Part shown: piece after piece, positions 530 through 56,745 of the stretch | Numbering within the stretch: the stretch's first letter is position 1 | How the letters are laid out: every line of letters starts with the position of its first letter | Origin: Octopus sinensis | Taxonomy: Eukaryota | DNA length: 64,000 nucleotides | NCBI RefSeq assembly: GCF_006345805.1 | Contig: NC_042997.1 | Coordinates: 81,096,001-81,160,000, forward strand | Direction: 5' to 3' | The notes under the pieces: model-generated | What the model saw: only the letters and a program-made list of their open reading frames with translations | Told to the model about the DNA's origin: nothing | Databases searched by the model: none | Position numbers and translations under genes: made by a program

Positions 530-1660
530 ATATATGGCTGCACTTGACTTTCAGCAATCTAGAGAATGCCTTTGACAGGGTCTCTTGCTCCCTGATCTGG
601 TGGTCACTGTGAAAGTTAAGAGTAGATGAATGGTTTGTTAAAAACCATACAATCCATATACAGGAGTTTAGTCAGTAAGGTGAGAGTAAATAATGAGTAC
701 AGTGATGAATTAAGTGAACAGATACATGTTTCTCCAGGGCTTGACTCTCATTCCCCTCCTATTTATCATTGTCTTATTACCAATTACAGAGTTATTTAAG
801 ACTGGTTGCCCATGAGAACTTCTCTATGCTGATGACCATGTTCTTATAGCTGAATCTGTAGCAAAATTAAAAAAGAAATTCTCAATGTTGAAGCAAAACC
901 TGGATCCAAAAGGCCTAAAATGTAACTTATCAAAGACCAAAGTTCAAAGCAAGAAAGCAGACAGTATACTAATCCCTTCAGGAAAATTGCCTACTTTCAT
1001 CTGTAGAAATTCCATACAGTATATTTAGTACAAACTATGGACACATGTGAAATACAATGGAATCACAGAAAGATTAACAGAAACTACACTTTGTTTGTGA
1101 CAGATGCATAGGAGCAATAAGCACTGAGAACATATGGAAATAGATTTTTTCAAATGCCCAAGAGGATCTGTAGAGGTAGTAGATACTTTCTGTACCCGAG
1201 ATAATTAACAGTAAAGGAGGACGTTCTAAAAGTATAGCTGCTAGAATACAAACCACTTGGAGAAAGACCAGAGAGTTATTACCTCTGTAACAAAAGGCCT
1301 CTCTCTGAGTGAAAGGCAGATTTTATGATGCTTATGCATGAACAGCAACACTATATGATAGTAAAGTGTGAATTGTGGATACAGAGGACATGCAAAGACA
1401 AGGAAGAAGTGAAGTTAGCATCCTCTGTTGGATGTGCAATGTCAGTGTACACATACAATAAAGTACAAATGTGTTGAGAGAAAAAGTTGTGCTTAAAAGA
1501 TATCAGATATGGTGTGTAAGAAAGAAAACTGTATTGGTTTGGTTATGTAATGTATATGGATGAGTACAGCTGCATAAAGAGGTGCGGATTGTTAAATATG
1601 AATGGAACATATGGGAGAGGGAGACTCAGGAAGACATGGGACAAAGTTGTGAATCTGCAT
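530..1660 (+). pseudogene. Heavily degraded RTE-clade LINE RT/C-terminal fragment
   Basis: Remnants of AFDRV..SLIWWS (~570-610), ctc tat gct gat gac = LYADD at 822-836, and GRLRKTWDKVV in ORF 1550-1750; collinear with the younger RTE copies in this window. Confidence 0.75.
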
Positions 1661-9849: not shown

Positions 9850-11883
9850 ACCAGAGATGCTCAAAATATCTGGCAGTGCCGGCTATAGCCTAGTCACCCG
9901 TATAGTTAACCAGGTGATACACAAAGGAGTCATACCCAATGATTGGTGTAGCAGCACCATAGTCAACTGCTACAAAGGTAAAGGTGATGCTTTAGATACA
10001 AATAATTACAGAGGTATCAAGCTGTTGGATCAGGTAATGAAGGTCCCGCAGAAGGTCATAGCCCAATTAATTAGGGAGAGAGTCAATTTAGACGAGATGC
10101 AGATTGGGTTTGTGACAGGAAAAGCACCACTGATGCCATATTTCTGGTAAGACAGCTGCAAGAGAAATATCTCGCCAAAGATAAACCTCTGTACCTGGCT
10201 TTCATTGACATGGAGAAAGCCTTTGACAGGATCCCCCGATCCCTTATCTGGTGGTCAATGAGGAAACTAAGGATAGAGGAATGGTTAGTGGGAGCTGTGC
10301 AAGCCATGTACAGGGACACTTTCAGTAAGGTGAGGGTTGGCAACAAGTACAGTGACAAATTCCGGGTAGAGGTAGGGGTCCGCCAAATAGCCCCCTCCTA
10401 TTCATCATAGTCCTCCAGGCAATAACAGAGGAATTCAAGACAGGATGCCCCTAGGAGATCCTCTATGCCAATGACCTTGTCCTAATTGCTGAGTCACTAT
10501 CAGAATTAGAGGAGAAGTTTCAGGTGTGGAAGCAAGGATTAGAATCAAAGGGCCTTAGGGTTAACCTAGCTAAAACCAAAGCCCTAATAAGTAGGAAGGC
10601 AGACAAACCACAAATCCCTTCAGGCAGATGGCCCTGCTCGATCTGTAGAAAAGGCGTAGGTAGAAACTCTATAAGATGTACCCAGTGTAAGCTATGGACA
10701 CATAAGAGGTGCAGCAATATCAAAGGAAGGCTAACTGGGAAGATAGTTTTTGTATGTGGTAGATGCTCAGGAGTAATAAACACTGAAAATGTGCAGAGAA
10801 CAACTGCCCCACATTCCAGGAAGAAAAACTACAAATAGTTGTAGCTTCCATTAACTAGGTGACCAAGTCAGTAGCGGGGGAGGGTGCACTGAAAGTGTAG
10901 CTGCTAGAATAAGAATAGCCTGGGCAAAGTTCAGAGTATGATGCATATGTATGAACAGCCATGCTACATGGCAGTGAAACATGGGCCATGACTTCTGACG
11001 ACATGTGTAAGTTCACAAGGAATAAAGCCAGTATAATTCGATGGATGTGTAATGTCGGTGTGCATACTTGACGGAGTGTAAGTATCTTGAGAGAAGAGTT
11101 GGACTTAAGAAGCATCAGATGTGGTGTGCAAGAGAGATGACTGAGCTGGTATGGTCATGTGGTGAGAATGGATGAGGATAGCTGTGTGAAAAAGTACCAC
11201 ACCCTAGCAGTTGAAGGAACCTGTGCAAGAGGTAGACCCAGGAATACCTTGGATGAGGTCGTGAAGCACGACCATCGATCATTAATCCTCACCGAGGCAA
11301 TGACTAGTGACTGAGACCTTTGGAAATATGCAGTGTGTGAGAAGACCTGGCAAGCCAAGTGAGACCATAACCCGTTGCTTATGTCAGGGGTGTAACCAAC
11401 CCACTTATGCATATCTTCTTTCCTTCGTTGGACACTAAACTCTACTTGCGAAAACCTGTTGAGGCAAGTGAAATCGAAATCAAATCAAATTTGATAACTG
11501 GCATCCGTGCCAGTGGAGCGCTAAGAGCACCATCTGAGCACCATTTGAGCATGATCGCTGACTGGCTTCTGTGCCAGTGGCACATAAACAGCACTATTCA
11601 AACATAATCATTACCAGCTTCGCCTTACTGACACTTGTGCCGGTGGCACATGAAAAACATTCAAGCAAGATCATTGTCAGTGCTGCTGGACTGTCTCCTG
11701 TGCAGGTGGCAGGTAAAATCACCCACTACACTCGCGGAGTGGTTGGCATTAGGAAGGGCATCCAGCTGTAGAAACACTGCCAGATCAGATTGGAGCCTGG
11801 TGCAGCCATCTGGTTCAGTCAAATCATCCAACCCATGCTAGCATGGAAAGCAGATGTTAAATGATGATGATGATGATGGTGAT
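9850..11883 (+). mobile_element. 5'-truncated RTE-clade LINE: RT with PHD insert, C-terminus, 3' UTR and (GAT)n tail
   Basis: ORFs 9857-10150, 10210-10410 and 10524-10838 give NYRGIKLL, EKAFDR.PRSLIWW, NLAKTK and the C4HC3 finger; frameshifts and stops; ends catgctagcatggaaagcagatgttaaatgatgatg. Confidence 0.92.
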
Positions 11884-12073
11884 ATATAATGTATTTGCAT
11901 TCAGCATAAATTTGTATACAGCAAAGACTTCTGTATAAATGTGGAAACATCACCTTTCTCTTTCTCTAACAGAATGTATGGCAACTAAAAGACAAAAGTA
12001 CCACAAAAATTGATAAACTGTACCAAATCATAATATGGTGGATCTGGATTGTGTTAGTTATGTATTGGCCAAA

Positions 12074-26109: not shown

Positions 26110-26415
26110 ATGTCAAATTAAGTAAAAGTATGGTTGTCCTTGCGTACAGGCTCATCCCATGTAACCCTCTCCAACTGAGCATCCCTAATCTCACAAGCTC
26201 ATAGGTGCTATTGTATAAAAAGTACCTGCGCCGATGCTGTGTAAAACCACCCAGTACACTCTGTAGAATGGTTGGTGTTAGGAAGGGCATCCAGCCATAG
26301 AAACCATGCCAAAATAGGCATGGAGCTTGAACAGCCCTTCAGCTGGTCAGCTCCTGTTAAACCATCCAACCCACACCAGCATGGAAAATAGACATTAAAC
26401 AATGATGATGATGAT
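26110..26415 (+). mobile_element. SINE-like element with RTE-type 3' tail and (GAT)n
   Basis: ggttggtgttaggaagggcatccagcc..ccaaccc..cagcatggaaaatagacattaaacaatgatgatg. Confidence 0.7.
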
Positions 26416-26782
26416 GGCTTGCCCAAGGGGCCAAGTAGGGCAAACCTGAAACCACATGGATTAAAATGAAGTTCTTATCTACAAAACCCTGTCTGCACCT
26501 TCTTAACCACATTACAATGAATATTTGTAAATCCCTAAAATACAGGGTATTTACAAAAACAATTTGATAAACTTGATTATAATGTTTCCCTGCTAGAAAT
26601 AGCAAATGCATCTCCATGAAATCCATTCACACCATCTAAAAGGAAACACTGTATAATGTAATTGCTGATATACCATATCTGAAAATATACCAGAGTAGTC
26701 ATTTCTGGAATGCTTTTACCAGCAAGAAATACTTTTTATATCTGAAGATGACATTGATTTATGTGTAATCTAATAGACCTAT

Positions 26783-31179: not shown

Positions 31180-31531
31180 TGCTGAAATGGTGTTTTTAGG
31201 TATCACGTGCTCAGGAGCCAATCCAGCAGCACTGGTATCAACCTCGCTTGAATGTTGCTTTTCATGTGCCACTGGCACAAGTTCGAGTAAGGTAATGCTG
31301 GTAATGATTACGCTTGAATGGTGTGTTTTACATGTCACTGGCATGGGAGCCTGGCAACAGCCCTGGCAACGATAACGCTTGAATGGTGCTCTTTGTGCTC
31401 CACTGGCACAGATGTCATTGAATTTGATTTCGATTTCAATTTCACTTGCCTCCACAGGTTTTTGCAAGCAGAGTTTAGTGTCCAATGAAGGAAAGGTATG
31501 CATAAGTGGGCTGGTTACACCACTGGCATAG
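31180..31531 (-). mobile_element. RTE LINE 3' UTR fragment
   Basis: Reverse complement of the 11370-11700 type UTR (gaggcaagtgaaattgaaatcgaaatc..). Confidence 0.8.
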
Positions 31532-35424: not shown

Positions 35425-36354
35425 TCTCTTATTATAAAAGGCAGATTTTATCTGCCCCCCTTTGTCAGTTATAGAAATCTACAATATAGGATTTCTTCAA
35501 TTACAATTTACTTAGCATTTTTAAGAGTAGAATGCATCGGGTTTTGCCAGGTCCACTTTTTTAAATTTAAACTCCAATTAAGCAAAATTTACAGAAAACT
35601 CACATTCTGGTGTGTATGTCAAATGCTTTTCTTAATGTGGTTTACATCACATGCACACGCACACACACAGTGTGCAATGAATAAAATGAAAGTAATTCAC
35701 CTTTTGTAGTGAGTGACTCTTTCAGTCTGCCACTTCCTCTTTACACACATAGACACACAAATATATAAATAAAATTGTAAGCTAACGTGCGTGTGTGTGT
35801 GCGTGTGTGTGTGAGGGTGCGTGTGTGTGTGTGTGTGTGTGCGTGCGTGTGCGTGAGTGTGTGACAGGAAAGTTTTTTAGGACGAATATAAGACCTATAT
35901 CGGCGATGTTTCGCTTGTCGTAGCACGGGTTTCCGTCGATTTCCGTAAAAAACTTTTATTTTTTTACATAAGTAATGAGAGCGAAAGAGACTAAGAGAAA
36001 GCGATTGTATGACGAGGGAAGTTCTTTTGAAGTTACCGTGCATGGGACGCATTGATGTACATGTGTGTGTGTGTGTGTGTTTGATGGAGTGTGGGAGACA
36101 GACAGTATGTTGTGTAAGTGAAGTGCTTCTGTTAGTGTGTGTGAAGAAACAGAGAGAGTAATGTGTGAAAGAGAGAGATAACTGAATTTTTTTACTCGGT
36201 GTATGTGTATATGTATGTATGCATGTGTGTATGTATGTGTGTGTGTATGTATGTATGTATGTATGGCCGATTCAGTGTTTACATTTTTTACGGAAATCGA
36301 CGGAAACGTGTGCTACGACAAGCGAAACATCGCCCCTATATCCAAGTAGCAGAA

Positions 36355-36821
36355 AGATCGCCCAAAAGTGTATATAGATATTTAAATGTATTTATATATT
36401 CATCTATACACAGATGTATGTATAATGTGTGTGTATATATTTCCATACACGTAACCATTCACTCCGCACAAAGTTTTTTAGGACGAAAATAAGATCTAAA
36501 GTTATCTCTAAGTAGCACAGAGATCGCCCAAAAGTGTATATAGATATATAAATGTAGTTATATATTCATTTATGCACACATGTATGTATAATGTGTGTGT
36601 ATATATTTCCATAGAGGTAACCATTCACTCCATACAAAGTTTTTTAGCACGAAAATAAGATCTAAAGTTATCTCTAAGAAACAGAAAGATCGCCCAAAAG
36701 TGTATATAGATATTTAAATGTATTTATATATTCATCTATACACACATATATGTATAATGTGCGTGTATATATTTCCATAGAGGTAACCATTCAATCCATA
36801 CAAAGTTTTTTAGGACGAAAA
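36355..36821 (+). repeat. 166-bp minisatellite, ~2.8 copies, inside the Helitron
   Basis: agatcgcccaaaagtg at 36355, 36521 and 36687. Confidence 0.9.
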
Positions 36822-37102
36822 TATTTATATATAAAAGAAAGGTTGTCTGTCTATCTACTCCGATTTAGATTCCTAACTACTCCCCCATTTTGCGATGCAG
36901 TTTAACCAAAACCGGGTATCTTATAGTCGTGATTCATATCGAGCCCTTCTGGGTATTAGCGCACGTCTACGATGAGTCTATGATTTTACAAATAATTTAC
37001 CATCATTTTTTTCCATTTTAATGCATATTTTTTTTAATAAACGGAAGTAACTCTCAAACTTCACACCAATATGCGTGCTCATATGCGACGTAATATCACA
37101 TC

Positions 37103-37565
37103 AGCAGCATTTCCTCACACCCTCCTTGCACTTGGCGAAGGCAAAATACCAGGGGATGAAAATGGTAATATTGCCATCGATTCCATTTGAACCATTGTTA
37201 AGACGCCTTCTGATCTCAGAGATGCAGTGTTCCCAGATCTACAAGCTAATTATCAGAATATGGTTTGGATTGGCAAAAAGGCTGTACTGGCCCCGAGGAA
37301 TAAAACTGTTCACCATATTAATGATGAAATGCTAAAACTCATTCCTGGGGAAGTCTATGTATATCAGTCTATCGATACAACTCCTGACCCAGAGGACGTC
37401 ATCAACTATCCAGTAGAGGTACTCAATTCCTTTGAGCACCCCGGACTACCACCACACTTTCTCAAACTTAAAGTTGGTGCCCCTATAATGCTCATCAGAA
37501 ATTTGGTTCCCCCAAAACAATGCAATGGCACATGTTTGATCGTTAAGTCCTTATCTCCCACCGTA
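37103..37565 (+). pseudogene. Helitron RepHel helicase (Pif1 family) fragment
   Basis: AVLAPRNKTV..IN..IPGE..YQSIDT..NYPVEVLNSFEHPGLPPHFLKLKVGAPIMLIRNL.PPKQCNGT; upstream LLALGEGK..* with a stop. Confidence 0.9.
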
Positions 37566-37830
37566 AGCTTATATCAATATTTGCCTGAATAATCATCATA
37601 ATTCAGTGCAATCATTAACAGTACTTTCAAGCAATTCAGCCCCGAGCAACGCCGGGCAATTCTGCCAGTATATATATAAATATACACAAATATAAGAGAG
37701 TGTCCACTATGTGGTCGACTCTTGCGCTAAAAATAGATCCGTTATGGTCTCAACCACCAAAAATTGTTTCCAAGGAGAATTAGCACAACCATTAACGTAA
37801 ACGAGCAGGGCAAATGAAAAATAACAAAAA

Positions 37831-39990
37831 TGAAGGGATTTGTGGTTTGCCTGCCTTCCTACCTATTAGGACTTTGGTTTTAGCTAGGTTGATTCTAAGG
37901 CCCTTCGATTTTAAGGCCCTTCAATTCTAATCCTTGTTTCCACACTTGAAACTTCTCCTCTAGTTCTGATAGACTCAGTGATTAGAGAAAGGTCATCAGC
38001 ATAGAGGAGATCCCAGGGGCATCCTGTCTGGAATTCCTCCGTTATCGCCTGGAGTACTATGATAAATAGGAGGGGGCTGAGGACTGAACCCTGGTGGACC
38101 CCAACCTCTACTGTGAATTCTTCAGTGTATTTGTTGCCAACCCTCACCTTACTTACAGCGTCCTTGTACATGGCTTGCACAGCTCTCACTAACTATTCAT
38201 CTATCCCTAGTTTTCTCATTGACCACCAGATAAGGGATCGGGGGACCCTGTCAAAGGCTTTCTCCATGTTAATGAAAGCCAAGTACAGAGGTTTATCTTT
38301 GGCTAGATATTTCTCTTGCAACTGTTTTACCAGAAATACGGCATCAGTGGTGCTTTTCCCTGGCATGAAACCAAACTGCATCTCATCCAAGTTGACTCTC
38401 TCCCTAATCAGTTGGGCTATGACCCTCTCTGTAACCTTCATTACCTGATCCAACAGCTTGATACTTCTGTAATTATTTGTATCTAGGGCGTCACCTTTAC
38501 CTTTGTAGCAGTTAACTATTATGCTGCTACACCAGTCATTGGGAATGACTCCTTCATGTATCACCTGATTAACTATATGGGTGACTAGGCTATAGCCGAC
38601 ACTGCCAGATATTTTGAGCATCACTGCAGTAATTCCTGATGGGCCCGGGGCTTTCCCTGTCCTCATACTTCTAATTGCCTTGACTACCAAGGAACTGTCA
38701 ACACGGATAGCTGGTCCCTCTGTTAGGTCGACATTCGGCAGACTCTCTTTATCCCATGTATTTTCTTTATTCAGCAACCTTTCATAGTGGCGTCTCCAGA
38801 CCACTCTCTTTGCAGCCTCATTTAGTGCAACTGAACCATCATCCATGCAAACACATTTCTCTGCTACCACATCATAATTCTCTCTCACACACTGTCTGCA
38901 ACACGAAATACCTCAAGTCTTTCGTCCTCATGGCGCAGAACATTGGCAAATTTTTTCTTATCAGCTTCCCCTCTGGCTAAATACACCTGCCTCCTAGCTT
39001 CCCTTCTGGCAGTCTGATACTCTTCCCTGCTACCACCATTCTTTCAGTCCTTCCAAGCCTGTTTCTTTTGTCTAATAGCCCTGTCAACAATATTGTTCCA
39101 CCACCACGTTATTTTGGGTCTTGAGGGGACTTTGCACCAACCACAGATCTGGTCAGTGGCTCTCAGCAGGTTGTCCCTTAGAAACCTCCAGTTGTCTTCT
39201 ACCCCATGTGAAGCTATATCCCATTCTATTTCGTCAAAGGCTTCAAGTAATATGTCTCTAAATCTCTGTCCATTGGCAGGATCTTTAAGCTTCCAGACCC
39301 TTCTTCTCTATGTTGGTCGTCTTCTGGTCATCCTCTTAGTCCTGATCCTAAAGTCACTAACTACCAGTCTATGTTGTGGGGTACATTCTTCGCCTGGGAA
39401 GGTTTTTGCATTTATAAGCAGCAATCTTTCCCTTTTTCTGGCAAGGATGTAGTCAATTTGGCTAGTATGTCGGCCCAATCGGTAGGTGACTAGGTGGCTG
39501 GTAGGTTTCCTGAAGTTAGTGTTGCAAACCATAAGATCATTCGCATCGCAGAACTCCAGCAGCCTGGTTCCCTCCTCGTTGTGGGAACCATAACCATAGC
39601 CTCCATGTACGCCATGGAAGCCCCCAGCATGTTGTCCAACATGCCCATTGAAGTCACCAGCCACAAAGAGAAGGTCCCTGTCGTTCGTCAACGAGGTAGT
39701 CTGCAATAGGGTGTCATAGAATCGGTCTTTCTGTCCATAGGGTAGCCCTGGCTGAGGGGCATAGGCCGATATAATGGTTGCTAATCCATGATGAAGCACT
39801 AATCTAATCTAAAGTATTCTGTCGCATACTCTGACTACCTCAATTACCTTATCTACCCATTTTTCAGCGAGAAGTATACCCACGCCCCCAACCCCGTCAG
39901 TGTTCCCAGCCCAGAAAATCTTGTACCTGTGTTCTTTGCCTCTCGCTTTGAGGCCGCGACCTGTTCACTGACAAAGCTTCGTGCTGCATC
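37831..39990 (-). mobile_element. RTE-clade LINE fragment: APE endonuclease through RT YADD
   Basis: ORF 39308-39799 SAYAP..GDFNGHVG..SQIDYIL..QHRLVV; ORF 38193-38888 GKAPGPSG..NYRSIKLL..EKAFDRVPR; ORF 37911-38189 VHQGSVLSPLL..LYADD. Confidence 0.93.
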
Positions 39991-40488: not shown

Positions 40489-40578
40489 ATCTATAAAATA
40501 ATATGTTACATTACTCGATAGTCAAGATAAAACTCTGAGTTTCAGATGCCGAGTAATGCAACATATTATTTTATAGAT
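40489..40578. repeat. 29-bp inverted repeat with 32-nt loop
   Basis: atctataaaataatatgttacattactcg / cgagtaatgcaacatattattttatagat, 1 mismatch. Confidence 0.85.
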
Positions 40579-40667
40579 AAATTTCCTCTATTTACATAAT
40601 ATTGAGGTCTCTTTCTTTCTTTTGTTATCTTACCGTTTTACCATATATATATATATATATATATATA

Positions 40668-43600
40668 TAACGAGTACAGTGAAGAATTCCGGGTAGAGGT
40701 TGGGGTCCACCAAGGTTCAGTCCTCAGTCCCCTCCTATTTATCATAGTCCTCCAGGCAATAACGGAGGAATTCAAGACAGGTTGCCCCTGGGAGCTCCTC
40801 TATGCTGATGACCTTGCTCTAATTGCTGAGTCACTATCAGAACTGGAGGAGAAGTTTCAGATGTGGAAACAAGGATTAGAATCGAAGGGCCTTAGAATCA
40901 ACCTAGCCAAAACCAAAGTCCTAATAAGTAGGAAGGTAGATCAATCACATACGCCTTCAGGTAGATGGCCCTGCTCGATCTGTAAAAAAGGTGTTGTAGT
41001 AGAAACTCTATAAGATGCACCAAGTGTAAGCTATGGACACATAAGAGGTGCAGCAATGTCAAAGGAAGGCTAACTAGGAAAATAGTTTTTGTCTGTGGCA
41101 AATGCTCAGGAGCAATAAACACTGGAAATGTGCAGAGACCAACTTCTGCCACGTTCCAGGGAGACAAACTAGAAGTAGTTGATAGCTTCCGCTACCTAGG
41201 AGACCAAGTCAGTAGCGGGGGTGGGTGTGCTGAAAGTGTAACTGCTAGAGTAAGAATAGCCTGGGCAAAGTTTAGAGAGCTCTTACCCCTGCTAGTGACA
41301 AAAGGCCTCTCGCTCAGAGTAAAAGGCAGACTGTATGATGCATGTGTACGTACAGCCATGCTACATGGTAGTGAAACATGGGCCGTGACTGCTGAGGATA
41401 TGCGTAAGCTCGCAAGAAATGAAGCCAGTATGCTCCGATGGATGTGTAATGTCAGTGTTCATAATCGTCAGAGTGTAAGTTCCTTGAGAGAAAAGTTGAA
41501 CCTAAGAAGCGTCAGTTGTGGTGTGCAAGAGAGACGTTTGCGCTGGTATGGTCATGTGATGAGAATGGCTGAAGAAGATAGTTGTGTGCAAAAGTGCTAC
41601 ACCCTAGCAGTTGAGGGAACCTGTGGAAGAGGTAGACCCAGGAAAACCTGGGACGAGGTGGTGAAGCACGACCTTCGAACTTTAGGTCTCACTAAGGAAA
41701 TGTCTAGAGACCGAGACCTATGGAAGTATGCTGTGCGTGAGAAGACCCGGCAAGACTAGTCAGGCCATAACCCGTGGCCCCTACCTGGGACATAGTCAGT
41801 CCTTCTGTGCATACCTTCCTTCTTGTGACACTTATGAAGACCTGTTGAGGCAAGTGAAAATCAAATCAAAACAAATCAAAATAGATGAACATCAGTGGAA
41901 TTGTATTCTTTGTGGTACCAGTGCCGGTGGCACACAAGAAAACCACCCAAACGTGGCTGTAGCCAGTACCGCATCGACTGGCCTCCGTGCTGTGGGCACA
42001 ACAAACACCATCCGATCGTGGCCGTTCGCCAGCCTCATCTGGCACCTGTGTCGGTGGCACATAAAGACACCATCCGAAGACCCGGCGACGTAGTCAGTCT
42101 ACCTGTGCATACCTTCCCTCTTATGACACTTGTGAAGACCTGTTGAGGCAAGTGTGTGACACTTGTGAAGACCTGTTGAGGCAAGTGTGTGACACTTGTG
42201 AAGACCTGTTGAGGCAGAGGCAAGTGTGTGACACTTGTGGAGACCTGTTGAGGCAAGTGTGTGACACTTGTGAAGACCTGTTGAGGCAAGTGAAAATCAA
42301 ACCAAATCAAAATAGATGAACATCAATGGAATTTGTATCTTTGTGGTTCCAGTACCGGTGGCACACAAGAAAACCATCCGAACGTGGCCGTAGCCAGTAC
42401 CGCATCGACTGGCCTCCGTGCTGTGGGCACAACAAACACCATCTGATCGTGGCCGTTCGCCAGCCTCATCTGGCACCTGTGTCGGTGGCACATAAAAACA
42501 CCATCCGAAGACCCGGCGACGTAGTCAGTCCACCTGTGCATACCTTCCTACTTATGACACTTGTGAAGACCTGTTGAGGCAAGTGTGTGACACCTACTTA
42601 TGACACTTGTGAAGACCTGTTGAGGCAAGTGTGTGACACTTGTGTAGACCTGTTGAGGCAAGTGAAAATCAATCAAATCAAATCAAATCAAACCAATCAA
42701 AATAGATGAACATCAATGGAATTTGTATCTTTGTGGTACCAGTACCGGTGGCACACAAGAAAACCATCCGAACGTGGCCGTAGCCAGTACCGCATCGACT
42801 GGCCTCTGTGACGTGGGCACATAACAAACACCATCCGATCGTGGCCGTTCGCCAGCCTCATCTGGCACCTGTGTCGGTGGCACATAAAAACACCAACCGA
42901 AGACCCGGCAAGACTAGTCAGGCCATAACCCGTGGCCCCTACTTGGGACGTAGTCAGTCCACCTGTGCATACCTTCCTTCCTTCCTGTGACACTTGTGAA
43001 GACCTGTTGAGGCAAGTGAAAATCAAATCAAATCAAATCAAAATAGATGAACATCAATGGAATTTGTATCTTTGTGGTACCAGTGCCGGTGGCACACAAG
43101 AAAACCATCCGAACGTGGCCGTAGCCAGTACCGCATCGACTGGCCTCCGTGCTGTGGGCACGTAACAAACACCATCCGATCGTGGCCGTTCGCCAGCCTC
43201 ATCTGGCACCTGTGTCGGTGGCACATAAAAACACCATCCGAAGACCCGGCAAGACTAGTCAGGCCATAACCCATGGCCCCTACCTGGGACGTAGTCAGTC
43301 CACCTGTGCATACCTTCCTTCTTGTGACACTTGTGAAGACCTGTTGAGGCAAGTGAAAATCAAATCAAAACAAATCAAAATAGATGAACATCAATGGAAT
43401 TTGTATCTTTGTGGTACCAGTGCCGGTGGCACACAAGAAAATCATCCGAACGTGGCCGTAGCCAGTACCGCATAGACTGGCCTCCGTGCTTTGGGGATGT
43501 AACAAACACCATCCGATCGTGGCCGTCCGCCAGCCTCATCTGGCACCTGTGTCGGTGGCACATAAAAAACACATCCGAGCGTGGCCGTCTGCCAGCCTCG

Positions 43601-43863
43601 TCTGGCACCTGTGTCGGTGGCACATAAAAACACCATCCGAGCGTGGCCGTTCGCCAGCCTCGTCTGGCACCTGTGTCGGTGGCACATAAAATCACCCACT
43701 ACACTCTCGGAGTGGTTGGCGTTAGGAAGGGCATCCAGCTGTAGAAACACTGCCAGATCTGACTGGCCTGGTGCAGCCTTCGGGCTCCCCAGACCCCAGT
43801 TGAACCGTCCAACCCATGCTAGCATGGAAAACGGACGCTAAATGATGATGATGATGATGATGA
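40668..43863 (+). mobile_element. Young 5'-truncated RTE LINE with tandemly amplified 3' UTR and (GAT)n tail
   Basis: NEYSEEFRVEVGVHQGS..LYADD; PHD with a 2-nt frameshift; uninterrupted 209-aa C-terminal ORF 41130-41759 (FRYLG..RLRWYGH..GRGRPRKTW). Confidence 0.95.
41745..43690 (+). repeat. Higher-order tandem array of the LINE ORF end and 3' UTR (5 units of ~340-430 bp; 33-bp and ~60-bp subrepeats)
   Basis: atagatgaacatca at ~41881, 42312, 42702, 43043 and 43380. Confidence 0.92.
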
Positions 43864-44345
43864 TATACATATATAAATACTTATATACAATCGTCAGATT
43901 TACACTCATCTTCAGGTTTTATTTCAAAATATTATAAATCTAATTTTACATCCCTTTAAAAATAAGCAATACAATTAAGCATTAAAGATTAAAAATTAAG
44001 AATTAAAATTATACTTTGTAATATTAAGAATTAAAATTTATAAATTATACATTATAAATATGAATTAGTAAATATATATCAATCATGTAAAATCAAGTAT
44101 ATGTCAAATACAGAAAGTGAGATATAAGATTAAACATCAGAATAAAAATGTCTGTGTTTAAATGTAATATATAACAAGAAAAATTCAAATACATATCTTC
44201 CTTTTTTTGCTGGTACTAAAATGGTGATTTGAGGAAGAAGATAACATGGAACTATAGGTGATTAGTACCAAAATGGGTAATTACACTATACATAGTTTTA
44301 ATTTTAAAGTATCCTTTATTATTATTTTCAAATTTACCTATATTG

Positions 44346-46451: not shown

Positions 46452-46830
46452 CGCTTGAATGTTTTTTCATGTGCCACCAGCACAAGTGCCAGTAAGGCAA
46501 TGCAGGTAACGATCACACTTGAATGGTGCTTTTTACGTGCCCATCAGCATGGAGGCCAACTTGTTGCTCTGGCAACAATCACACTCGTATGGTACTCTTA
46601 GCGCTCCACTAGCACAGATGCCAATCATCGGATTTGATTTCAATTTCGATTTCACTTGCCTCAACAGGTCTTCACAAGCAGAGTTTAGTGTCCAATGAAG
46701 GAAAGGTACGCATAAATGGGCTGGTTACACCTCTGGCATAGGCCACAAGATTATTTTCTCACTTGAGCTTGCTGAGTCTTCTGAAGTACAGCATATTTCC
46801 AAAGGTCCAGGTCACTAGTTATTGCCTCAG
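46452..46830 (-). mobile_element. RTE LINE ORF end plus 3' UTR fragment
   Basis: Reverse complement of ..ctcactgaggcaataactagtgacctggacctttggaaatatgctg.. Confidence 0.8.
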
Positions 46831-46868
46831 TGAGGCCCAGTATATATATATATATATATATATATATA

Positions 46869-48119: not shown

Positions 48120-48540
48120 TATATATATAAAACAAAGTATAAATAATGGTCGTCGTCATCATTTAGTGTCCATTGTCCATGCTGGCATGGGTTGGACGGT
48201 TTGACTAGGCTGGCATGCTGGAAGGCTGTGCCAGAATCCAGTCTGATTTAGCTTGGTTTTCTACAGCTGGATACCCTTAGTTGTTTCCAGTAGTCATTGT
48301 AGGTTCATTACAGATAGGTCTCTCAATTGGTCCATTGATCAGTTGAGAAAAGTTGAACAACCTAAAAGATTAATACTACTTTCATCAGATCCATTTCTGG
48401 TTATAATCTCAGACCTTACCATAAGAGATTTTTACTAATCTAAACAATATTGTTAGCCTGATGGGCCAACAGAGAGCTTATGAAATATTTTTCCCAGATT
48501 GATAATCTCTCACCAATAACTTTATATGTATTTTTACATT

Positions 48541-51332: not shown

Positions 51333-53063
51333 AGAGAAATACCTAGCTAAAGATAAATCCCTATACTTAGCTTTTGTGGACTTGGAGAAAGCCTTTGACA
51401 GGATCCTCCAATCCCTTAACACGGTGGGCGATGCAGAAACTGGAGATTAACAAATGGTTAATAAGGGCTGTACAGGCCCTATACAGAGAGGCTGTTAGTA
51501 AAGTTAGGATTGGCAATGAGTATAGTGAAGAAGTAGGGGTCCACCAAGGTTCATCCTTCAGTTCCCTCTTATTCATCATAGTCCTCCAGGCAATAACAGA
51601 GGAATTCAAGACAAGATGACCCTGGGAGCTCCTCTATGCTGATGACCTGGCCATCTTACCAGAATCCCTACCAGAACTAGAGGAGTTTCAGGTGTGGAAG
51701 CAAGGATTAGAATCGAAGGGCCTTAGAGTCAACCTAGCTAAAACCAAAGTCCTAATAAGTAGGAAGGCAAACTCATCACACACCCCTTCAGGTAGGTGGC
51801 CCTGCTCAATCTGTAGAAAAGGTGTAGGTAGAAACTCTATAAGATGTACCCAGTGTAAGCTATGGACATATAAGAGGTGTAGCAACATCAAAGGAAGATT
51901 AACTGAGAAGATAGCTTTTGTGTGCGGCAGATGCACAGGGGCAATAAACACCACAGATGCTCAGAAAACAGATTGCATCACACTCCAGGGGAAGAAACTA
52001 GAAGTAGTTGATAGCTTCCACTACATAGGTGACCAAGTTAGTAGTGGTGGGGGGATGCTCAGAGAGTGTTACCACCAGAAAAAAAATAGCCTGGGAAAAA
52101 TTTAGAAAGCTTCTACCCCTACTGGTGACAAAGGGCCTCTCACTCAGAGTGAAAGGTAGATTGTACAATGCATGTGTGTGAATGGGCCATGACTGTGGAG
52201 AACATGCGTAGGCTCAAAAGAAATGAAGCTAGCATGATCTACTGGACATTTAATGTCAGTGTGCACACACAACAGAGTGTAAGCACCCTGAGAGAAATGT
52301 TGGACATAAAAAGCGTTGGATCTGGTGTGCAAGAGAGATGTTTGTGCTGGCATGGTCATGTACAATGGATGGATGAGGAGAGATGTGTGAAGAAGTTCCA
52401 CTCCCAAACAGCTGAAGGAATCTGGGGTAGAGGTAGACCTAGAAAGACATGGGATCAGGTGGTCAAGCATGACCTTCAAACATTGGGCCTCACAGAGGCA
52501 ATGACGAAAGACCGAGACCTCTGGAGATATGCTGTGACTGCAAAGACCCGACAAATGAAGTGAGTTCACGACTGTATCCTACACCAGTTTTGCATAACCG
52601 GCCCCAGCCCATTCAAAAGTACCTTGAATCGTAGGACGACCTGCTATGCTTCCTTACCTTGGATCGTAGGGTGCCCTTCTGTGCTTGAGGAGACCTACTG
52701 AGTCAAGTACATCAACATCAAAATAAAAATCAAATGGAAATTGTAGCTGTGATATTTGTGCTAGTGGCACGTGAAAAGCACCATCTGAATATGGCTAGCG
52801 CCGCCTTGACTGGTTTCCATGCCATTGGCACACAAAAAGCACTAACCAATTGTGGCCGTTGCCAGCCTCCTCTGGCCCCTGTGCCGGTGGCACATAAAAA
52901 GCATCCATTACACTCATGGAGTGGTTGGCATTAGGAAGGGTATCCAGCTGTAGAAACACTGCCAGATCAGACTGGAGCCTGGTGCAGCCTCCTGGCTTCC
53001 CAGATCCCGGTCGATTTGTCCAACCCATGCTAGTATGGAAAACAGACGTTAAATGATTATGAT
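51333..53063 (+). mobile_element. 5'-truncated RTE LINE (divergent subfamily) with 3' UTR
   Basis: EKYLAKDKSLYLAFVDLEKAFDR, LYADD, PHD (H>Y), GRGRPRKTWDQVV; RTE-type tail. Confidence 0.9.
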
Positions 53064-53579
53064 GATTACATGGAAAATTGCAAGCATGAAAAGTAATATT
53101 CTTAAGATTATAAACCTGGAAAAGTACAGGACAAGTTATTACACCTGGAAAAGTATAGGACAAGCTATTACTTCTAGTAAAGAATAAGAAACTTTTTACT
53201 TAAAATATTGCAGCAAAGAATGCCACTTCTAATATATCATTCTTTACAGTTCTAATCTTTTAAATTTATTGTACAAAGCTGTTTGTCTAATTTGTAAGTT
53301 TGTCTAATTAGTTACTTTTTTCTGTATTTAAGGTAGTAAATTAGCCAAATTCTATTTAAATAAGTATTGTGTTATTTGTAAACTATAATAAAATAATTTT
53401 TAATATTCAAATTTTAATTTTAGCTGCAATGTTTTAAGTAAAACGTTTCTTATTCTTTACTTTACTAGAAGTAATAGCTTGTCCTATACTCTTACAGGTG
53501 TAATAACTTGTCCTATACTTTTCCAGGTTTATAATCTTAAGAATATTACTTTTCATGCTCACATTTTTCCATGTAATCC
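53064..53579. mobile_element. MITE/foldback with ~155-bp TIRs inserted in the LINE (GAT)n tail
   Basis: gattacatggaaaa.. / ..ttttccatgtaatc; atgat on both flanks; ~30-bp subrepeat within each arm. Confidence 0.8.
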
Positions 53580-54640: not shown

Positions 54641-56745
54641 GCCCTTCCTAACACCAACCACTCTGGGAGTGTAGTGGGTGCTTTTACGTGCCACCAGCAT
54701 TAGGGCCAGTCAGGTGGTACTGGCAACAGCCACACTCAAATGGTGTTTTTTACGTGTCACCTGCTCAGGGGCCAGTCCAGTGGCACTGGCAATGACCTCG
54801 CATGAATATTTTTCACGTGCCACCAGCACAAGTACCAGTAAGGCAACGCTGGTAATGATCACACTTGAATGGTGCTTTTTACGTGCCACCAGCATGGAAG
54901 CCGTTCAACTGTTCTGGCAACGATCACTCTCGGAGGGAGGCCTTAGCACTCCACTAGCACAGATGCCAGTCATCAAATTTGATTTCGATTTCACTTGCCT
55001 CAAAAGGTCTTCACAAGCAGAGTTTAGTGTCCAATAAAGGAAAGGTATGCATAAGTGGGATGGTTACACCCCTGGCATAGGCCATGGGTTATGGTTTCAC
55101 TTGGCTTGTTGGGTCTTCTGAAGCACAGCATATTTCCAAAGGTTTAGGTCTCTAGTCATTGCCTCGGTGAGTCCTAATGTTTGAAGGTCATGCTTCACCA
55201 CCTCATCCCAGGTCTTCCTGGGTCTACCACTTCCATAGGTTCCCTCAATCGCTAGGGTGTGGCACTTTTTCACACAGCTATCCTCATCCATTCTTGCCAC
55301 ATGACCATACCAGTGCAATCGTCTCTCTTGCACACCACAACTGATGCTTCTTAGATCCAACTTTTTTCTCAAGGTACTTACACTCCGTCAAGTATGCACA
55401 CTGACATTGCACATCCATCGGATCATACTGGCTTACGCATATCCTCAGCAGTAACAGCCCATGTTTCACTGCCGTGTAGCATGGCTGTTCATACACATGC
55501 GTCATACAGTCTACCTTTTACTCTAAATGAGAGGCCCTTTGTCACCAGCAGAGGTAAGAGCTCTCTGAATGTTGCCCAGGCTATTCTTATTCTAGCAGCT
55601 ACACTTTCAGTGCACCCCCCTCCCTACTGACTTGGTCACCTAGGTAATGGAAGCTATCAACTACTTCTATTTTTTCTCCTTGGAATGTGGCAGAAGTTGT
55701 TCTCTGCACATTTTCAGTGTTTATTACTCCTGAGTATCTGCCACATACAAAAACTATATTCACAGTTAGCCTTCCTTTGATATTACTGCACCTCTTATGT
55801 GTCCATAGCTTACACTGGGTACATCTTATAGAGTTTCTACCTACACCTCTACAACAGATCAAGCAGGGCCATCTACCTGAAGGGATTTGTGGTTTGCCTG
55901 CCTTCCTACTTATTAGGACTTTGGTTTTAGCTCGGTTGACCCTAAGGCCCTTTGATTCTAATCCTTGCTTCCACACCTGAAACTTCTCCTCTAGTTCTGA
56001 TAGAGACTCAGCAATTAGAGCAAAGTCGTCAGCTTAGAGGAGCTCCCAGGAGCATTCTGTCTTGAATTCCTCTGTTATTGCCTGGAGGACTATGATAAAT
56101 AGGACTATGATAAATACCTCGATCCGGAATTCTTCACCGTATTCGTTGCCAACCCTCACCTTACTGACTGTGTCCTTGTACATGGCTTGCGCAGCTCTCA
56201 CTAACCATTCATCTATCCCTAGTGTTCTCATTGACCACCAGATAAGGGATCGGGGGACCCTATCAAAGGCTTTCTCTATGTTAATGAAAGCCAGGTACAG
56301 AGGTTTATCTTTGGCGAGGTATTTCTCCTGCAGCTGTCTTACCAGAAATATAGCATCAGTGGTGCTTTTCCCTGGCATGAACCCAAACTGCATCTCATCC
56401 AAACTGACTCCCTCCCTAATTAGTTGGGCTATGACCTTCTGCGGGACCTTCATTACCTGATCCAACAACTTGATACCTCTGTAATTATTTGTATCTAAAG
56501 CATCATCTTTACCTTTGTAGCAGTTGACTATGGTGCCGCTACACCAGTCATTGGGTATGACTCCTTTGTGTATCACCTGGTTAACTATATGGATGACCAG
56601 GCTATAGCTGACACTGCCAGCTATTTTGAGCATCTCTGCGGTGATTCCTGATGGACTGGAGGCTTTCCCTGTCTTCATACTCTTAATTGTTTTATCTACC
56701 AAGGTATTGTCAATTCAGATAGCTGGTCCCTCTGTTGGGTCGACA
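54641..56745 (-). mobile_element. RTE LINE fragment (RT, PHD, C-terminus, 3' UTR)
   Basis: ORFs 56034-56702, 55599-55976, 55284-55505 and 55097-55372. Confidence 0.92.

What the first reader, a model, noticed from the sequence alone, without database searches (positions are those of the whole stretch)
41745..43690. LINE 3' UTR amplified into a nested higher-order tandem array (nascent satellite)
Seen: five units (spacing ~431, 390, 341, 337 bp). Units at 41745, 42902 and 43245 begin with the last ORF codons (gacccggcaagactag); two others carry a deletion variant (gacccggcgacgtagtc). A 33-bp subrepeat is present ~5x at 42125-42292 and ~3x at ~42556-42662, and a ~60-bp subrepeat ~3x at ~43505-43690, before the normal tail. 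Other copies of the LINE in this window have a single, shorter UTR. Inference: RT template re-priming at insertion, or later slippage/unequal exchange, is turning a LINE end into a satellite.
Basis: partly seen in the sequence, partly recalled or inferred. Interest (0 to 1): 0.7.

Follow-up and report, generated by a model that had tools for sequence, protein, structure and literature searches.

The report
Tandemly amplified octopus LINE 3' UTR
A dead, 5'-truncated octopus LINE copy has had a ~340-bp piece of its 3' end duplicated head-to-tail into five diverged units. This is a real but ordinary case of a transposon-internal tandem array, a known starting material for satellite DNA.

Summary
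Five head-to-tail units start at 41741, 42076, 42507, 42899 and 43240. Each runs from the last 19 nt of the LINE ORF (stop codon included) to the end of the first clean 62-bp UTR subrepeat.

All four junctions are identical (…ACCATCCGA|AGACCCGGC…) and show only 2 nt (GA) of microhomology. U2 and U3 share a 37-bp deletion, a G>A change and expansions of a hairpin-forming 33-bp motif.

The 62-bp x3 block is not new. Single-UTR relatives carry 2-3 clean copies (L001; L053 from Octopus vulgaris), and diverged copies in the window carry degenerate ones. Three other 3' ends in the window, L001 and L053 all have a single UTR.

Units differ by 2-8%, with many CpG transitions and nested shared-derived characters. 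I infer one old illegitimate duplication followed by stepwise unequal exchange or slippage at the DNA level. Four independent RT re-priming events at the same two bases are unlikely.

It is neither a higher-order repeat nor a satellite: five units, 1.8 kb, one locus known. LINE 3'-UTR-derived tandem repeats are already documented (chicken CR1/HinfI, cetacean L1 satellite, HeT-A). Interest is low to moderate. The genome-wide search for the junction could not be run here.

The parts
40672..41759 (+). 5'-truncated, decayed LINE ORF remnant. It covers the RT from the YADD region onward, a Cys-rich PHD-like motif around 40960-41110, and the C-terminal 209-aa ORF at 41130-41759. The stop TAG is at 41757-41759.
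   Evidence: Pfam RVT_1, E=2.9e-15, for 40672-40989. Frameshift near 40990 and stop codons. 295 homologues, the closest named ones from Octopus, some with a precomputed PHD domain.
41741..42075 (+). Unit U1 (335 bp), the original ORF end plus UTR. Full head. GT deletion in the body, shared with U2. About 6-7 private changes.
42076..42506 (+). Unit U2 (431 bp). 37-bp head deletion, 33-bp motif x4.9, GTACCGG variant, GT deletion.
42507..42898 (+). Unit U3 (392 bp). 37-bp head deletion, a perfect 46-bp x2 duplication plus one 33-bp copy, GTACCGG variant, and an expanded (AAATC)n.
42899..43239 (+). Unit U4 (341 bp). Full head including the ORF-end codons and TAG. No private derived substitutions in the 200-bp polarised region.
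43240..43576 (+). Unit U5 (about 337 bp). Full head. It continues into the remaining ancestral 62-bp repeats and the tail. It keeps the ancestral C at alignment column 149.
42124..42292 (+). Array of the 33-bp hairpin motif (TGACACTTGTGAAGACCTGTTGAGGCAAGTGTG), 4.9 copies, inside U2.
   Evidence: TRF. Copies listed. A dimer folds at -25.8 kcal/mol, z=-4.3.
42547..42664 (+). A 46-bp x2 duplication (100% identical) plus one 33-bp copy, inside U3.
43500..43691 (+). Three clean 62-bp UTR subrepeats, each carrying the GTGYCGGTGGCAC palindrome. This is the ancestral state of the family.
   Evidence: TRF. The same block is in the single-UTR relatives L001 (3 copies) and L053 (2 copies). The motif occurs 17 times in the window, in or beside LINE 3'-UTR copies and fragments.
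43692..43864 (+). Conserved 3' tail containing GGGCATCCAGCTGTAGAAAC, ending in (ATG)n at 43842-43864.
   Evidence: Sequence. The tail core recurs seven times in the window. The same tail is in L001 and L053.

Best explanation
The array is a local tandem array inside one dead, 5'-truncated, frameshifted copy of an octopus APE-type LINE.

Step 1. One illegitimate event joined the boundary between the first and second 62-bp UTR repeats (…ACCATCCGA) to a point 19 nt before the end of the ORF (AGACCCGGCAAGACTAG…). The microhomology is 2 nt. Candidate mechanisms are replication template switching or end joining, and conceivably a single RT template jump. The result was a dimer of about 340 bp.

Step 2. 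Homologous unequal sister-chromatid or allelic exchange, or replication slippage between units, raised the copy number stepwise to five.

Step 3. Along the way one unit acquired a 37-bp deletion between GAC(G)TAGTCAG direct repeats, a G>A change and a duplication of a 33-bp hairpin motif. That unit was then itself duplicated, giving U2 and U3. Small-scale slippage continued, giving the 33-bp x5 array, the perfect 46-bp x2 duplication and (AAATC)n length changes.

Shown: the anatomy, the identical junctions, the nested shared-derived characters, the ancestral single-UTR state and the CpG-decay pattern.
Inferred: the molecular mechanism of each step, and that the array has no function.
For: Junctions. 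All four are at identical bases.

Ancestral state. Single-UTR architecture, including the 62-bp repeats, is seen in the close relatives L001 (92% aa) and L053 (O. vulgaris, 93-94% nt), and in three diverged copies in the window.

Polarised characters over 200 bp with two outgroups:
- Derived in all five units: 2.
- Derived in U1-U4: 1.
- Derived in U2+U3: 1, plus three head characters.
- Derived in U1+U2: the GT deletion.
- Private changes: U1 about 6-7, U5 about 5, U3 4, U2 2, U4 0. The edge units are oldest and the centre units youngest.

Pairwise body identity is 92.0-98.2%.

Six of about 22 unit substitutions are CpG transitions, so these are real diverged paralogues.

The 33-bp motif is a strong hairpin, z=-4.3, which would favour slippage.

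Internal-to-internal TE tandems and expansion by unequal exchange are documented (PMC5932611).
Against: No reads, population data or orthologous locus were available, so neither copy-number instability nor the timing relative to insertion is shown directly.

The heterogeneity of private-mutation counts among units is not significant on its own (my chi-square on the counts gives p of about 0.1).

Only 2 changes per 200 bp separate the array ancestor from the outgroups. The first duplication could therefore date from the insertion itself, or from the source element.

One character conflict remains: G>A groups U2+U3 while the GT deletion groups U1+U2. Explaining it needs an intra-unit crossover or a conversion.
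Confidence: 0.68

Rival explanations
1. RT template jumping during target-primed reverse transcription. While copying the RNA from its 3' end, the RT reached 19 nt into the ORF. It then jumped back to the boundary between 62-bp repeats 1 and 2 and re-copied the UTR. This happened either once, making the founding dimer, or four times, making the whole array at insertion.
For: The oldest unit split is old: U1 vs U5 is 92% identical, and only 2 shared-derived changes per 200 bp precede it. That is compatible with an origin at insertion. The junction has minimal microhomology, as RT jumps do. LINE RTs are known to switch templates (general knowledge).
Against: Four independent jumps would have to use exactly the same donor and acceptor bases. 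An origin at insertion predicts a star phylogeny. Instead U2 and U3 share at least four derived characters, U1 and U2 share a deletion, U4 has 0 private changes, and U2-U4 are 98.2% identical. Two close relatives and three in-window copies show no such jump.
Confidence: 0.12
2. The multimeric UTR already existed in the transcribed source element, a LINE subfamily with an arrayed UTR. This locus would then be just one retrotransposed copy of it.
For: Inter-unit divergence is comparable with the divergence between separate copies of the subfamily (units vs L001 91-95%). The number of 62-bp UTR repeats does vary between copies, 2 in L053 and 3 in L001, so the family's UTR is length-plastic.
Against: The two nearest relatives recovered have single UTRs. 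No predicted protein in the 5.8-billion-sequence collection contains the junction peptide in the two frames tested. Both are weak negatives, because no eukaryotic genome could be searched at the DNA level.
Confidence: 0.13
3. Assembly artefact: a single UTR or a short duplication was inflated by the assembler.
For: Tandem repeats of 92-98% identity are error-prone in assemblies. No reads were available.
Against: The units are structurally distinct: the 37-bp deletion, different 33/46-bp expansions and different (AAATC)n lengths. They also differ by substitutions enriched in CpG transitions, which is a mutational signature and not an assembly or sequencing-error signature.
Confidence: 0.05

Closest known systems
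Chicken HinfI repeat (SCR1) derived from a CR1 LINE (Li & Leung 2006, as tabulated in PMC9659126 Table 1 and PMC6947457 Table 1)
   Same: The tandem unit consists of the LINE 3' UTR plus a partial piece of the ORF end.
   Different: The chicken repeat is an established satellite-like family. Here there are only five units at one known locus, and only 19 nt of ORF are included.
Common cetacean satellite from the L1 3' end, and the Drosophila 18HT satellite from the HeT-A/TART 3' UTR (PMC9659126)
   Same: Non-coding 3' sequence of a non-LTR retrotransposon turned into tandem repeats.
   Different: Those are abundant, multi-locus or heterochromatic satellites. This array is 1.8 kb inside one element.
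PisTR-A satellite from the hypervariable 3' UTR tandem repeats of Ogre LTR retrotransposons (Macas et al. 2009, cited in PMC9659126)
   Same: A TE UTR that already contains variable short tandem repeats gives rise to larger arrays. Here the family UTR already carries 62-bp repeats whose number varies between copies.
   Different: An LTR element in plants. There, amplification happened outside the element into long arrays.
Internal-to-internal TE tandems in Drosophila melanogaster populations (McGurk & Barbash 2018, PMC5932611)
   Same: A head-to-tail junction between two internal positions of a TE, at low copy number, a possible substrate for expansion by unequal exchange.
   Different: Their main route, double insertion with a tail-to-5' junction and a target-site duplication, does not apply. 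The junctions here lack the tail and (ATG)n.

Membership tests
TE-internal tandem array (internal-to-internal tandem, or minisatellite within a transposon) | Head-to-tail copies whose junction joins two internal positions of the same TE, with no terminal sequence or target-site duplication at the junction | tested here: met
   The junction …ACCATCCGA|AGACCCGGC… joins the UTR 62-bp repeat boundary to ORF position -19. No tail or (ATG)n lies between units.
TE-internal tandem array | The ancestral element has the segment once | tested here: met
   L001, L053 and three in-window copies have a single UTR.
Satellite DNA | Long arrays (tens to thousands of units), usually at several loci or in heterochromatin | tested here: not met
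   Five units and 1.8 kb at this locus, with no further units in the 64-kb window. Genome-wide abundance is not testable with these tools.
Higher-order repeat (HOR) | A block of several diverged monomers repeated as a unit, with block-to-block identity above monomer-to-monomer identity | tested here: not met
   The head types run A B B A A. The identity matrix has no consistent i/i+2 periodicity: U2-U4 98.2% but U1-U3 93.3% and U3-U5 93.0%.
Double-insertion TE dimer (McGurk & Barbash model) | Junction made of an intact 3' end, a target-site duplication, and the 5' (often truncated) end of the next element | tested here: not met
   The junctions lack the 170-nt tail and (ATG)n. All four are identical internal-internal joins.
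APE-type non-LTR retrotransposon (LINE) | Reverse transcriptase domain, an N-terminal apurinic-type endonuclease, and a 3' end with a short tandem-repeat tail | tested here: met
   RVT_1 on the array copy. Exo_endo_phos_2 plus RVT_1 on the adjacent related minus-strand copy at 37831-39799. (ATG)n tail. Assignment to a clade (RTE, CR1 or other) was not tested.
Twin-priming inversion (considered for the neighbouring minus-strand LINE fragment) | Inverted 5' segment directly abutting the 3' segment, the two being contiguous or nearly so in the element | tested here: not met
   The two fragments overlap in RT sequence, since both contain the YADD region. They are also separated by about 0.8 kb of unrelated AT-rich DNA.

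The most novel reading that the evidence does not exclude
The arrayed UTR may not be a one-off. A LINE lineage in this octopus might carry and retrotranspose a multimerised 3' UTR, or the ~340-bp unit might already be seeding arrays at other loci. That would be a transposon-to-satellite transition caught in progress. The conserved 62-nt GTGCCGGTGGCAC hairpin modules would then be a copy-number-variable functional part of the UTR, for example for RT recognition.
Probability: 0.1. Interest if true: 0.5.

Novelty: new member of a known kind. Interest (0 to 1): 0.27.

Why it matters
The array is a clean, base-resolved example of how a transposon 3' end becomes a tandem repeat. It shows one microhomology junction, then stepwise unequal exchange, with slippage nested at four scales.

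It also shows that this octopus LINE family normally carries hairpin-containing 62-bp tandem repeats in its UTR, in variable number. That is useful for repeat annotation of cephalopod genomes. As one five-unit locus in a dead element, it does not change what is known about satellite origin.

Tried and rejected
- Rfam scan of 40500-44200 at E<=1 found nothing. ARAGORN on the whole window found no tRNA or tRNA-like SINE heads.
- A protein search with a plus-strand ORF spanning the U4/U5 junction gave no hits. The minus-strand junction ORF gave one hit, P0121 from O. vulgaris, which is a single-UTR copy.
- An exact scan of JGI metagenome contigs for the 18-nt junction gave 50 hits. BLAST showed no real similarity to the array in any of them: only L033 scored, with two 44-bp matches around the 18-mer, so I treat all 50 as chance matches.
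- Scans of viral contigs and of prokaryotic genome contigs for the 25-nt 62-bp-repeat core gave 0 hits. Those collections hold no octopus LINE and carry no information here.
- RNA folds of the 62-bp subrepeats and of the tail were no better than shuffles, z from -0.2 to -1.3. I make no structural claim for them.
- Twin priming between the minus-strand LINE fragment and the array copy was rejected because of overlapping RT sequence and the intervening spacer.
- Double insertion was rejected because no tail lies at the junctions.
- A target-site duplication could not be established. Both flanks are AT-rich low-complexity sequence with (AT)n on the 5' side, and the candidate ATATATAA is ambiguous.

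Full report
**1. What is there**

The region lies in AT-rich, microsatellite-rich eukaryotic DNA. A plus-strand LINE remnant begins abruptly at 40672, just after an (AT)n run. Its translation contains the RT YADD region (Pfam RVT_1, E=2.9e-15), a frameshift near 40990 and stop codons. It also has a Cys-rich PHD-like motif and an intact 209-aa C-terminal ORF ending in TAG at 41757-41759.

The ORF has 295 homologues. The closest named ones are Octopus bimaculoides proteins at 71-72% identity. The closest overall is a metagenome contig, L001, at 92% aa identity. A second close copy, L053, lies in the Octopus vulgaris chromosome OX597841.1 at 93-94% nt identity. The window is therefore from an octopus, either O. 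vulgaris or a near relative.

**2. The array**

The anchor GAAGACCCGGC occurs at 41741, 42076, 42507, 42899 and 43240. The five units measure 335, 431, 392, 341 and about 337 bp and align over their whole length. TRF and the repeat finder recover the same periods. Exact 24- and 27-mers recur 3 and 7 times, against 0 expected in shuffles.

Every unit runs from the last 19 nt of the ORF to the end of the first clean 62-bp subrepeat. In order it contains:
- the last 19 nt of the ORF, stop codon included;
- a head of about 110 nt in all (these 19 nt included), with one 33-bp motif at its end;
- an (AAATC)n microsatellite;
- two degenerate ~63-bp subrepeats and one clean 62-bp subrepeat.

U1, U4 and U5 have the full head. 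U2 and U3 lack 37 bp, deleted between two GAC(G)TAGTCAG direct repeats, and carry expansions of the 33-bp motif. The expansion is 4.9 copies in U2, and a perfect 46-bp x2 duplication plus one 33-bp copy in U3. After U5 come two more clean 62-bp repeats, the conserved tail of about 150 nt, and (ATG)n.

**3. What is ancestral**

L001 has one UTR of 613 bp with the same head, one 33-bp motif, (AAATC)n, two degenerate and three clean 62-bp repeats, and the same tail. L053 is a shorter 5'-truncated copy with two clean 62-bp repeats.

Three more diverged copies in the window, about 80% identical, also have single UTRs of about 0.5 kb built from degenerate ~62-66-bp repeats. They lie at 10346-11886 (+), 51529-53066 (+) and 54641-56104 (-). 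The palindromic core GTGYYRGTGGCAC occurs 17 times in the window against 0.01 expected, in or beside LINE 3'-UTR copies and fragments.

The ~340-bp multimerisation and the 33/46-bp expansions are specific to this copy.

Diverged copies have homologous ORF ends (…GAGAAGACCTGGCAAGCCAAGTGA…). The array therefore derives from the LINE, and the LINE did not capture a pre-existing repeat.

**4. How it arose**

*Junctions.* All four junctions are the same join, …ACACCA(T/A)CCGA|AGACCCGGC…. The parental sequences are …CATCCGA|GCGTGGCC… at the repeat 1/2 boundary and …GCGTGAGA|AGACCCGG… at the ORF end. They share only GA at the breakpoint. One illegitimate event followed by homologous amplification explains four identical junctions. 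Four independent RT jumps at the same bases do not.

*Polarised characters.* With L001 and L053 as outgroups over 200 bp:
- Two changes are shared by all five units.
- One is shared by U1-U4, so U5 split first.
- U2 and U3 share G>A, plus the 37-bp deletion, the TTATGAC variant and the 33-bp duplication.
- U1 and U2 share a GT deletion.
- Private changes number about 6-7 in U1, about 5 in U5, 4 in U3, 2 in U2 and 0 in U4.

*Identity and timing.* Body identities range from 92.0% (U1-U5) to 98.2% (U2-U4), and units are 91-95% identical to L001. The pattern of old edges, young centre and nested shared-derived characters is what stepwise unequal exchange predicts. It is not the star phylogeny expected if all units were made at insertion. 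The one character conflict, between U2+U3 and U1+U2, requires a crossover inside a unit or a conversion.

*Reality of the units.* Six of about 22 substitutions among the units are CpG transitions. Over all sequences the figure is 9 of 41 substitution events, with 14 CpG dinucleotides in 200 bp. This is a germline decay signature, so the units are real paralogues and not an assembler loop.

*Ongoing slippage.* The 33-bp motif contains the inverted repeat ACACTTG/CAAGTGT. A dimer folds at -25.8 kcal/mol, z=-4.3. This is a plausible cause of the local slippage, which is still recent because the 46-bp duplication is 100% identical.

*What stays open.* The first duplication is old. Whether it happened at insertion (one RT jump), in the source element, or soon afterwards at the DNA level cannot be resolved here.

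**5. What it is not**

- It is not a higher-order repeat. The head types run A B B A A with no multimer periodicity.
- It is not a double-insertion dimer, because there is no tail, (ATG)n or target-site duplication at the junctions.
- It is not a satellite by size or distribution as far as can be seen.
- It matches no RNA family, and no tRNA-derived element was found in the window.
- The neighbouring minus-strand LINE fragment at 37831-39799 (EN plus RT) overlaps the same RT segment and is separated by about 0.8 kb of unrelated DNA. It is an independent insertion and not a twin-priming inversion.

**6. Search for other arrayed copies**

No eukaryotic genome could be searched at the DNA level.
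- Two protein searches with ORFs spanning the junction found no protein carrying it. The only hit was the single-UTR O. vulgaris copy.
- The 18-nt junction in JGI metagenomes gave only chance matches.
- Viral and prokaryotic collections hold no octopus LINE at all.

This is weak negative evidence. The decisive test remains to be done.

**7. Comparison with what is known**

Tandem repeats and satellites derived from non-LTR 3' ends are documented:
- the chicken HinfI repeat from CR1, made of the 3' UTR plus part of ORF2;
- the common cetacean satellite from L1;
- 18HT from HeT-A/TART;
- PisTR-A from the variable 3' UTR repeats of Ogre (PMC9659126 Table 1; PMC6947457 Table 1).

Internal-to-internal TE tandems at low copy number are common in Drosophila populations, and unequal exchange is the accepted route of expansion (PMC5932611). 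An octopus RTE LINE whose 3' UTR is mostly microsatellite has been described (PMC9115989).

The present array is a new instance of this known kind, in a cephalopod LINE.

**8. Verdict**

The array is a real, old, five-unit internal tandem amplification of a LINE 3' end, best explained by one microhomology junction plus stepwise unequal exchange or slippage. It is ordinary in kind and of modest interest.

Noticed in passing
window 37831-39799 (-): A second LINE fragment of the same or a closely related family, on the minus strand. It has an APE endonuclease (Exo_endo_phos_2) and the RT up to just past YADD. It sits head-to-head with the array copy, about 0.8 kb away. It overlaps the array copy in RT sequence, so it is an independent insertion and not a twin-priming inversion.
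   Followed up: partly
window 37227-37592 (+): An ORF fragment matching the Pif1 helicase 2B domain (E=3.4e-14), probably a Helitron or PIF1-like remnant, directly left of the minus-strand LINE fragment.
   Followed up: no
window 36337-36823: A separate 166-bp tandem repeat, 2.9 copies at 91% identity, flanked by (TGTA)n/(GT)n. It has no evident relation to the LINE array.
   Followed up: no
window 10346-11886 (+), 51529-53066 (+), 54641-56104 (-), 747-1563 (+): Four further copies of related LINE subfamilies, 66-80% identical to the array copy. The three that reach the 3' end have a single UTR made of 3-5 degenerate ~62-66-bp repeats, each with a GTGCYRGTGGCAC-like palindrome. A tandem-repeat UTR is thus an old, conserved property of the family.
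   Followed up: partly
window 19087 (-), 26242-26416 (+), 48150-48278 (-), 59959 (+): Short dispersed elements that share only the tail core GGGCATCCAGCTGTAGAAA, some ending in (ATG)n-like repeats. They may be SINE-like elements or extreme 5' truncations using the LINE tail. ARAGORN found no tRNA-like heads.
   Followed up: partly
L053 9600-10700 and flanks (O. vulgaris OX597841.1): The single-UTR copy in O. vulgaris lies inside what looks like a C2H2 zinc-finger-type tandem coding repeat. A second, diverged LINE tail sits about 300 bp away at 10629-10785. The annotated 108-aa 'hypothetical protein' P0121 is simply an antisense ORF through the LINE tail and UTR.
   Followed up: no
window 31266-31513 (-), 46471-46837 (-): Two more diverged LINE UTR fragments containing the head and the palindrome motif. 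They were not characterised further.
   Followed up: no
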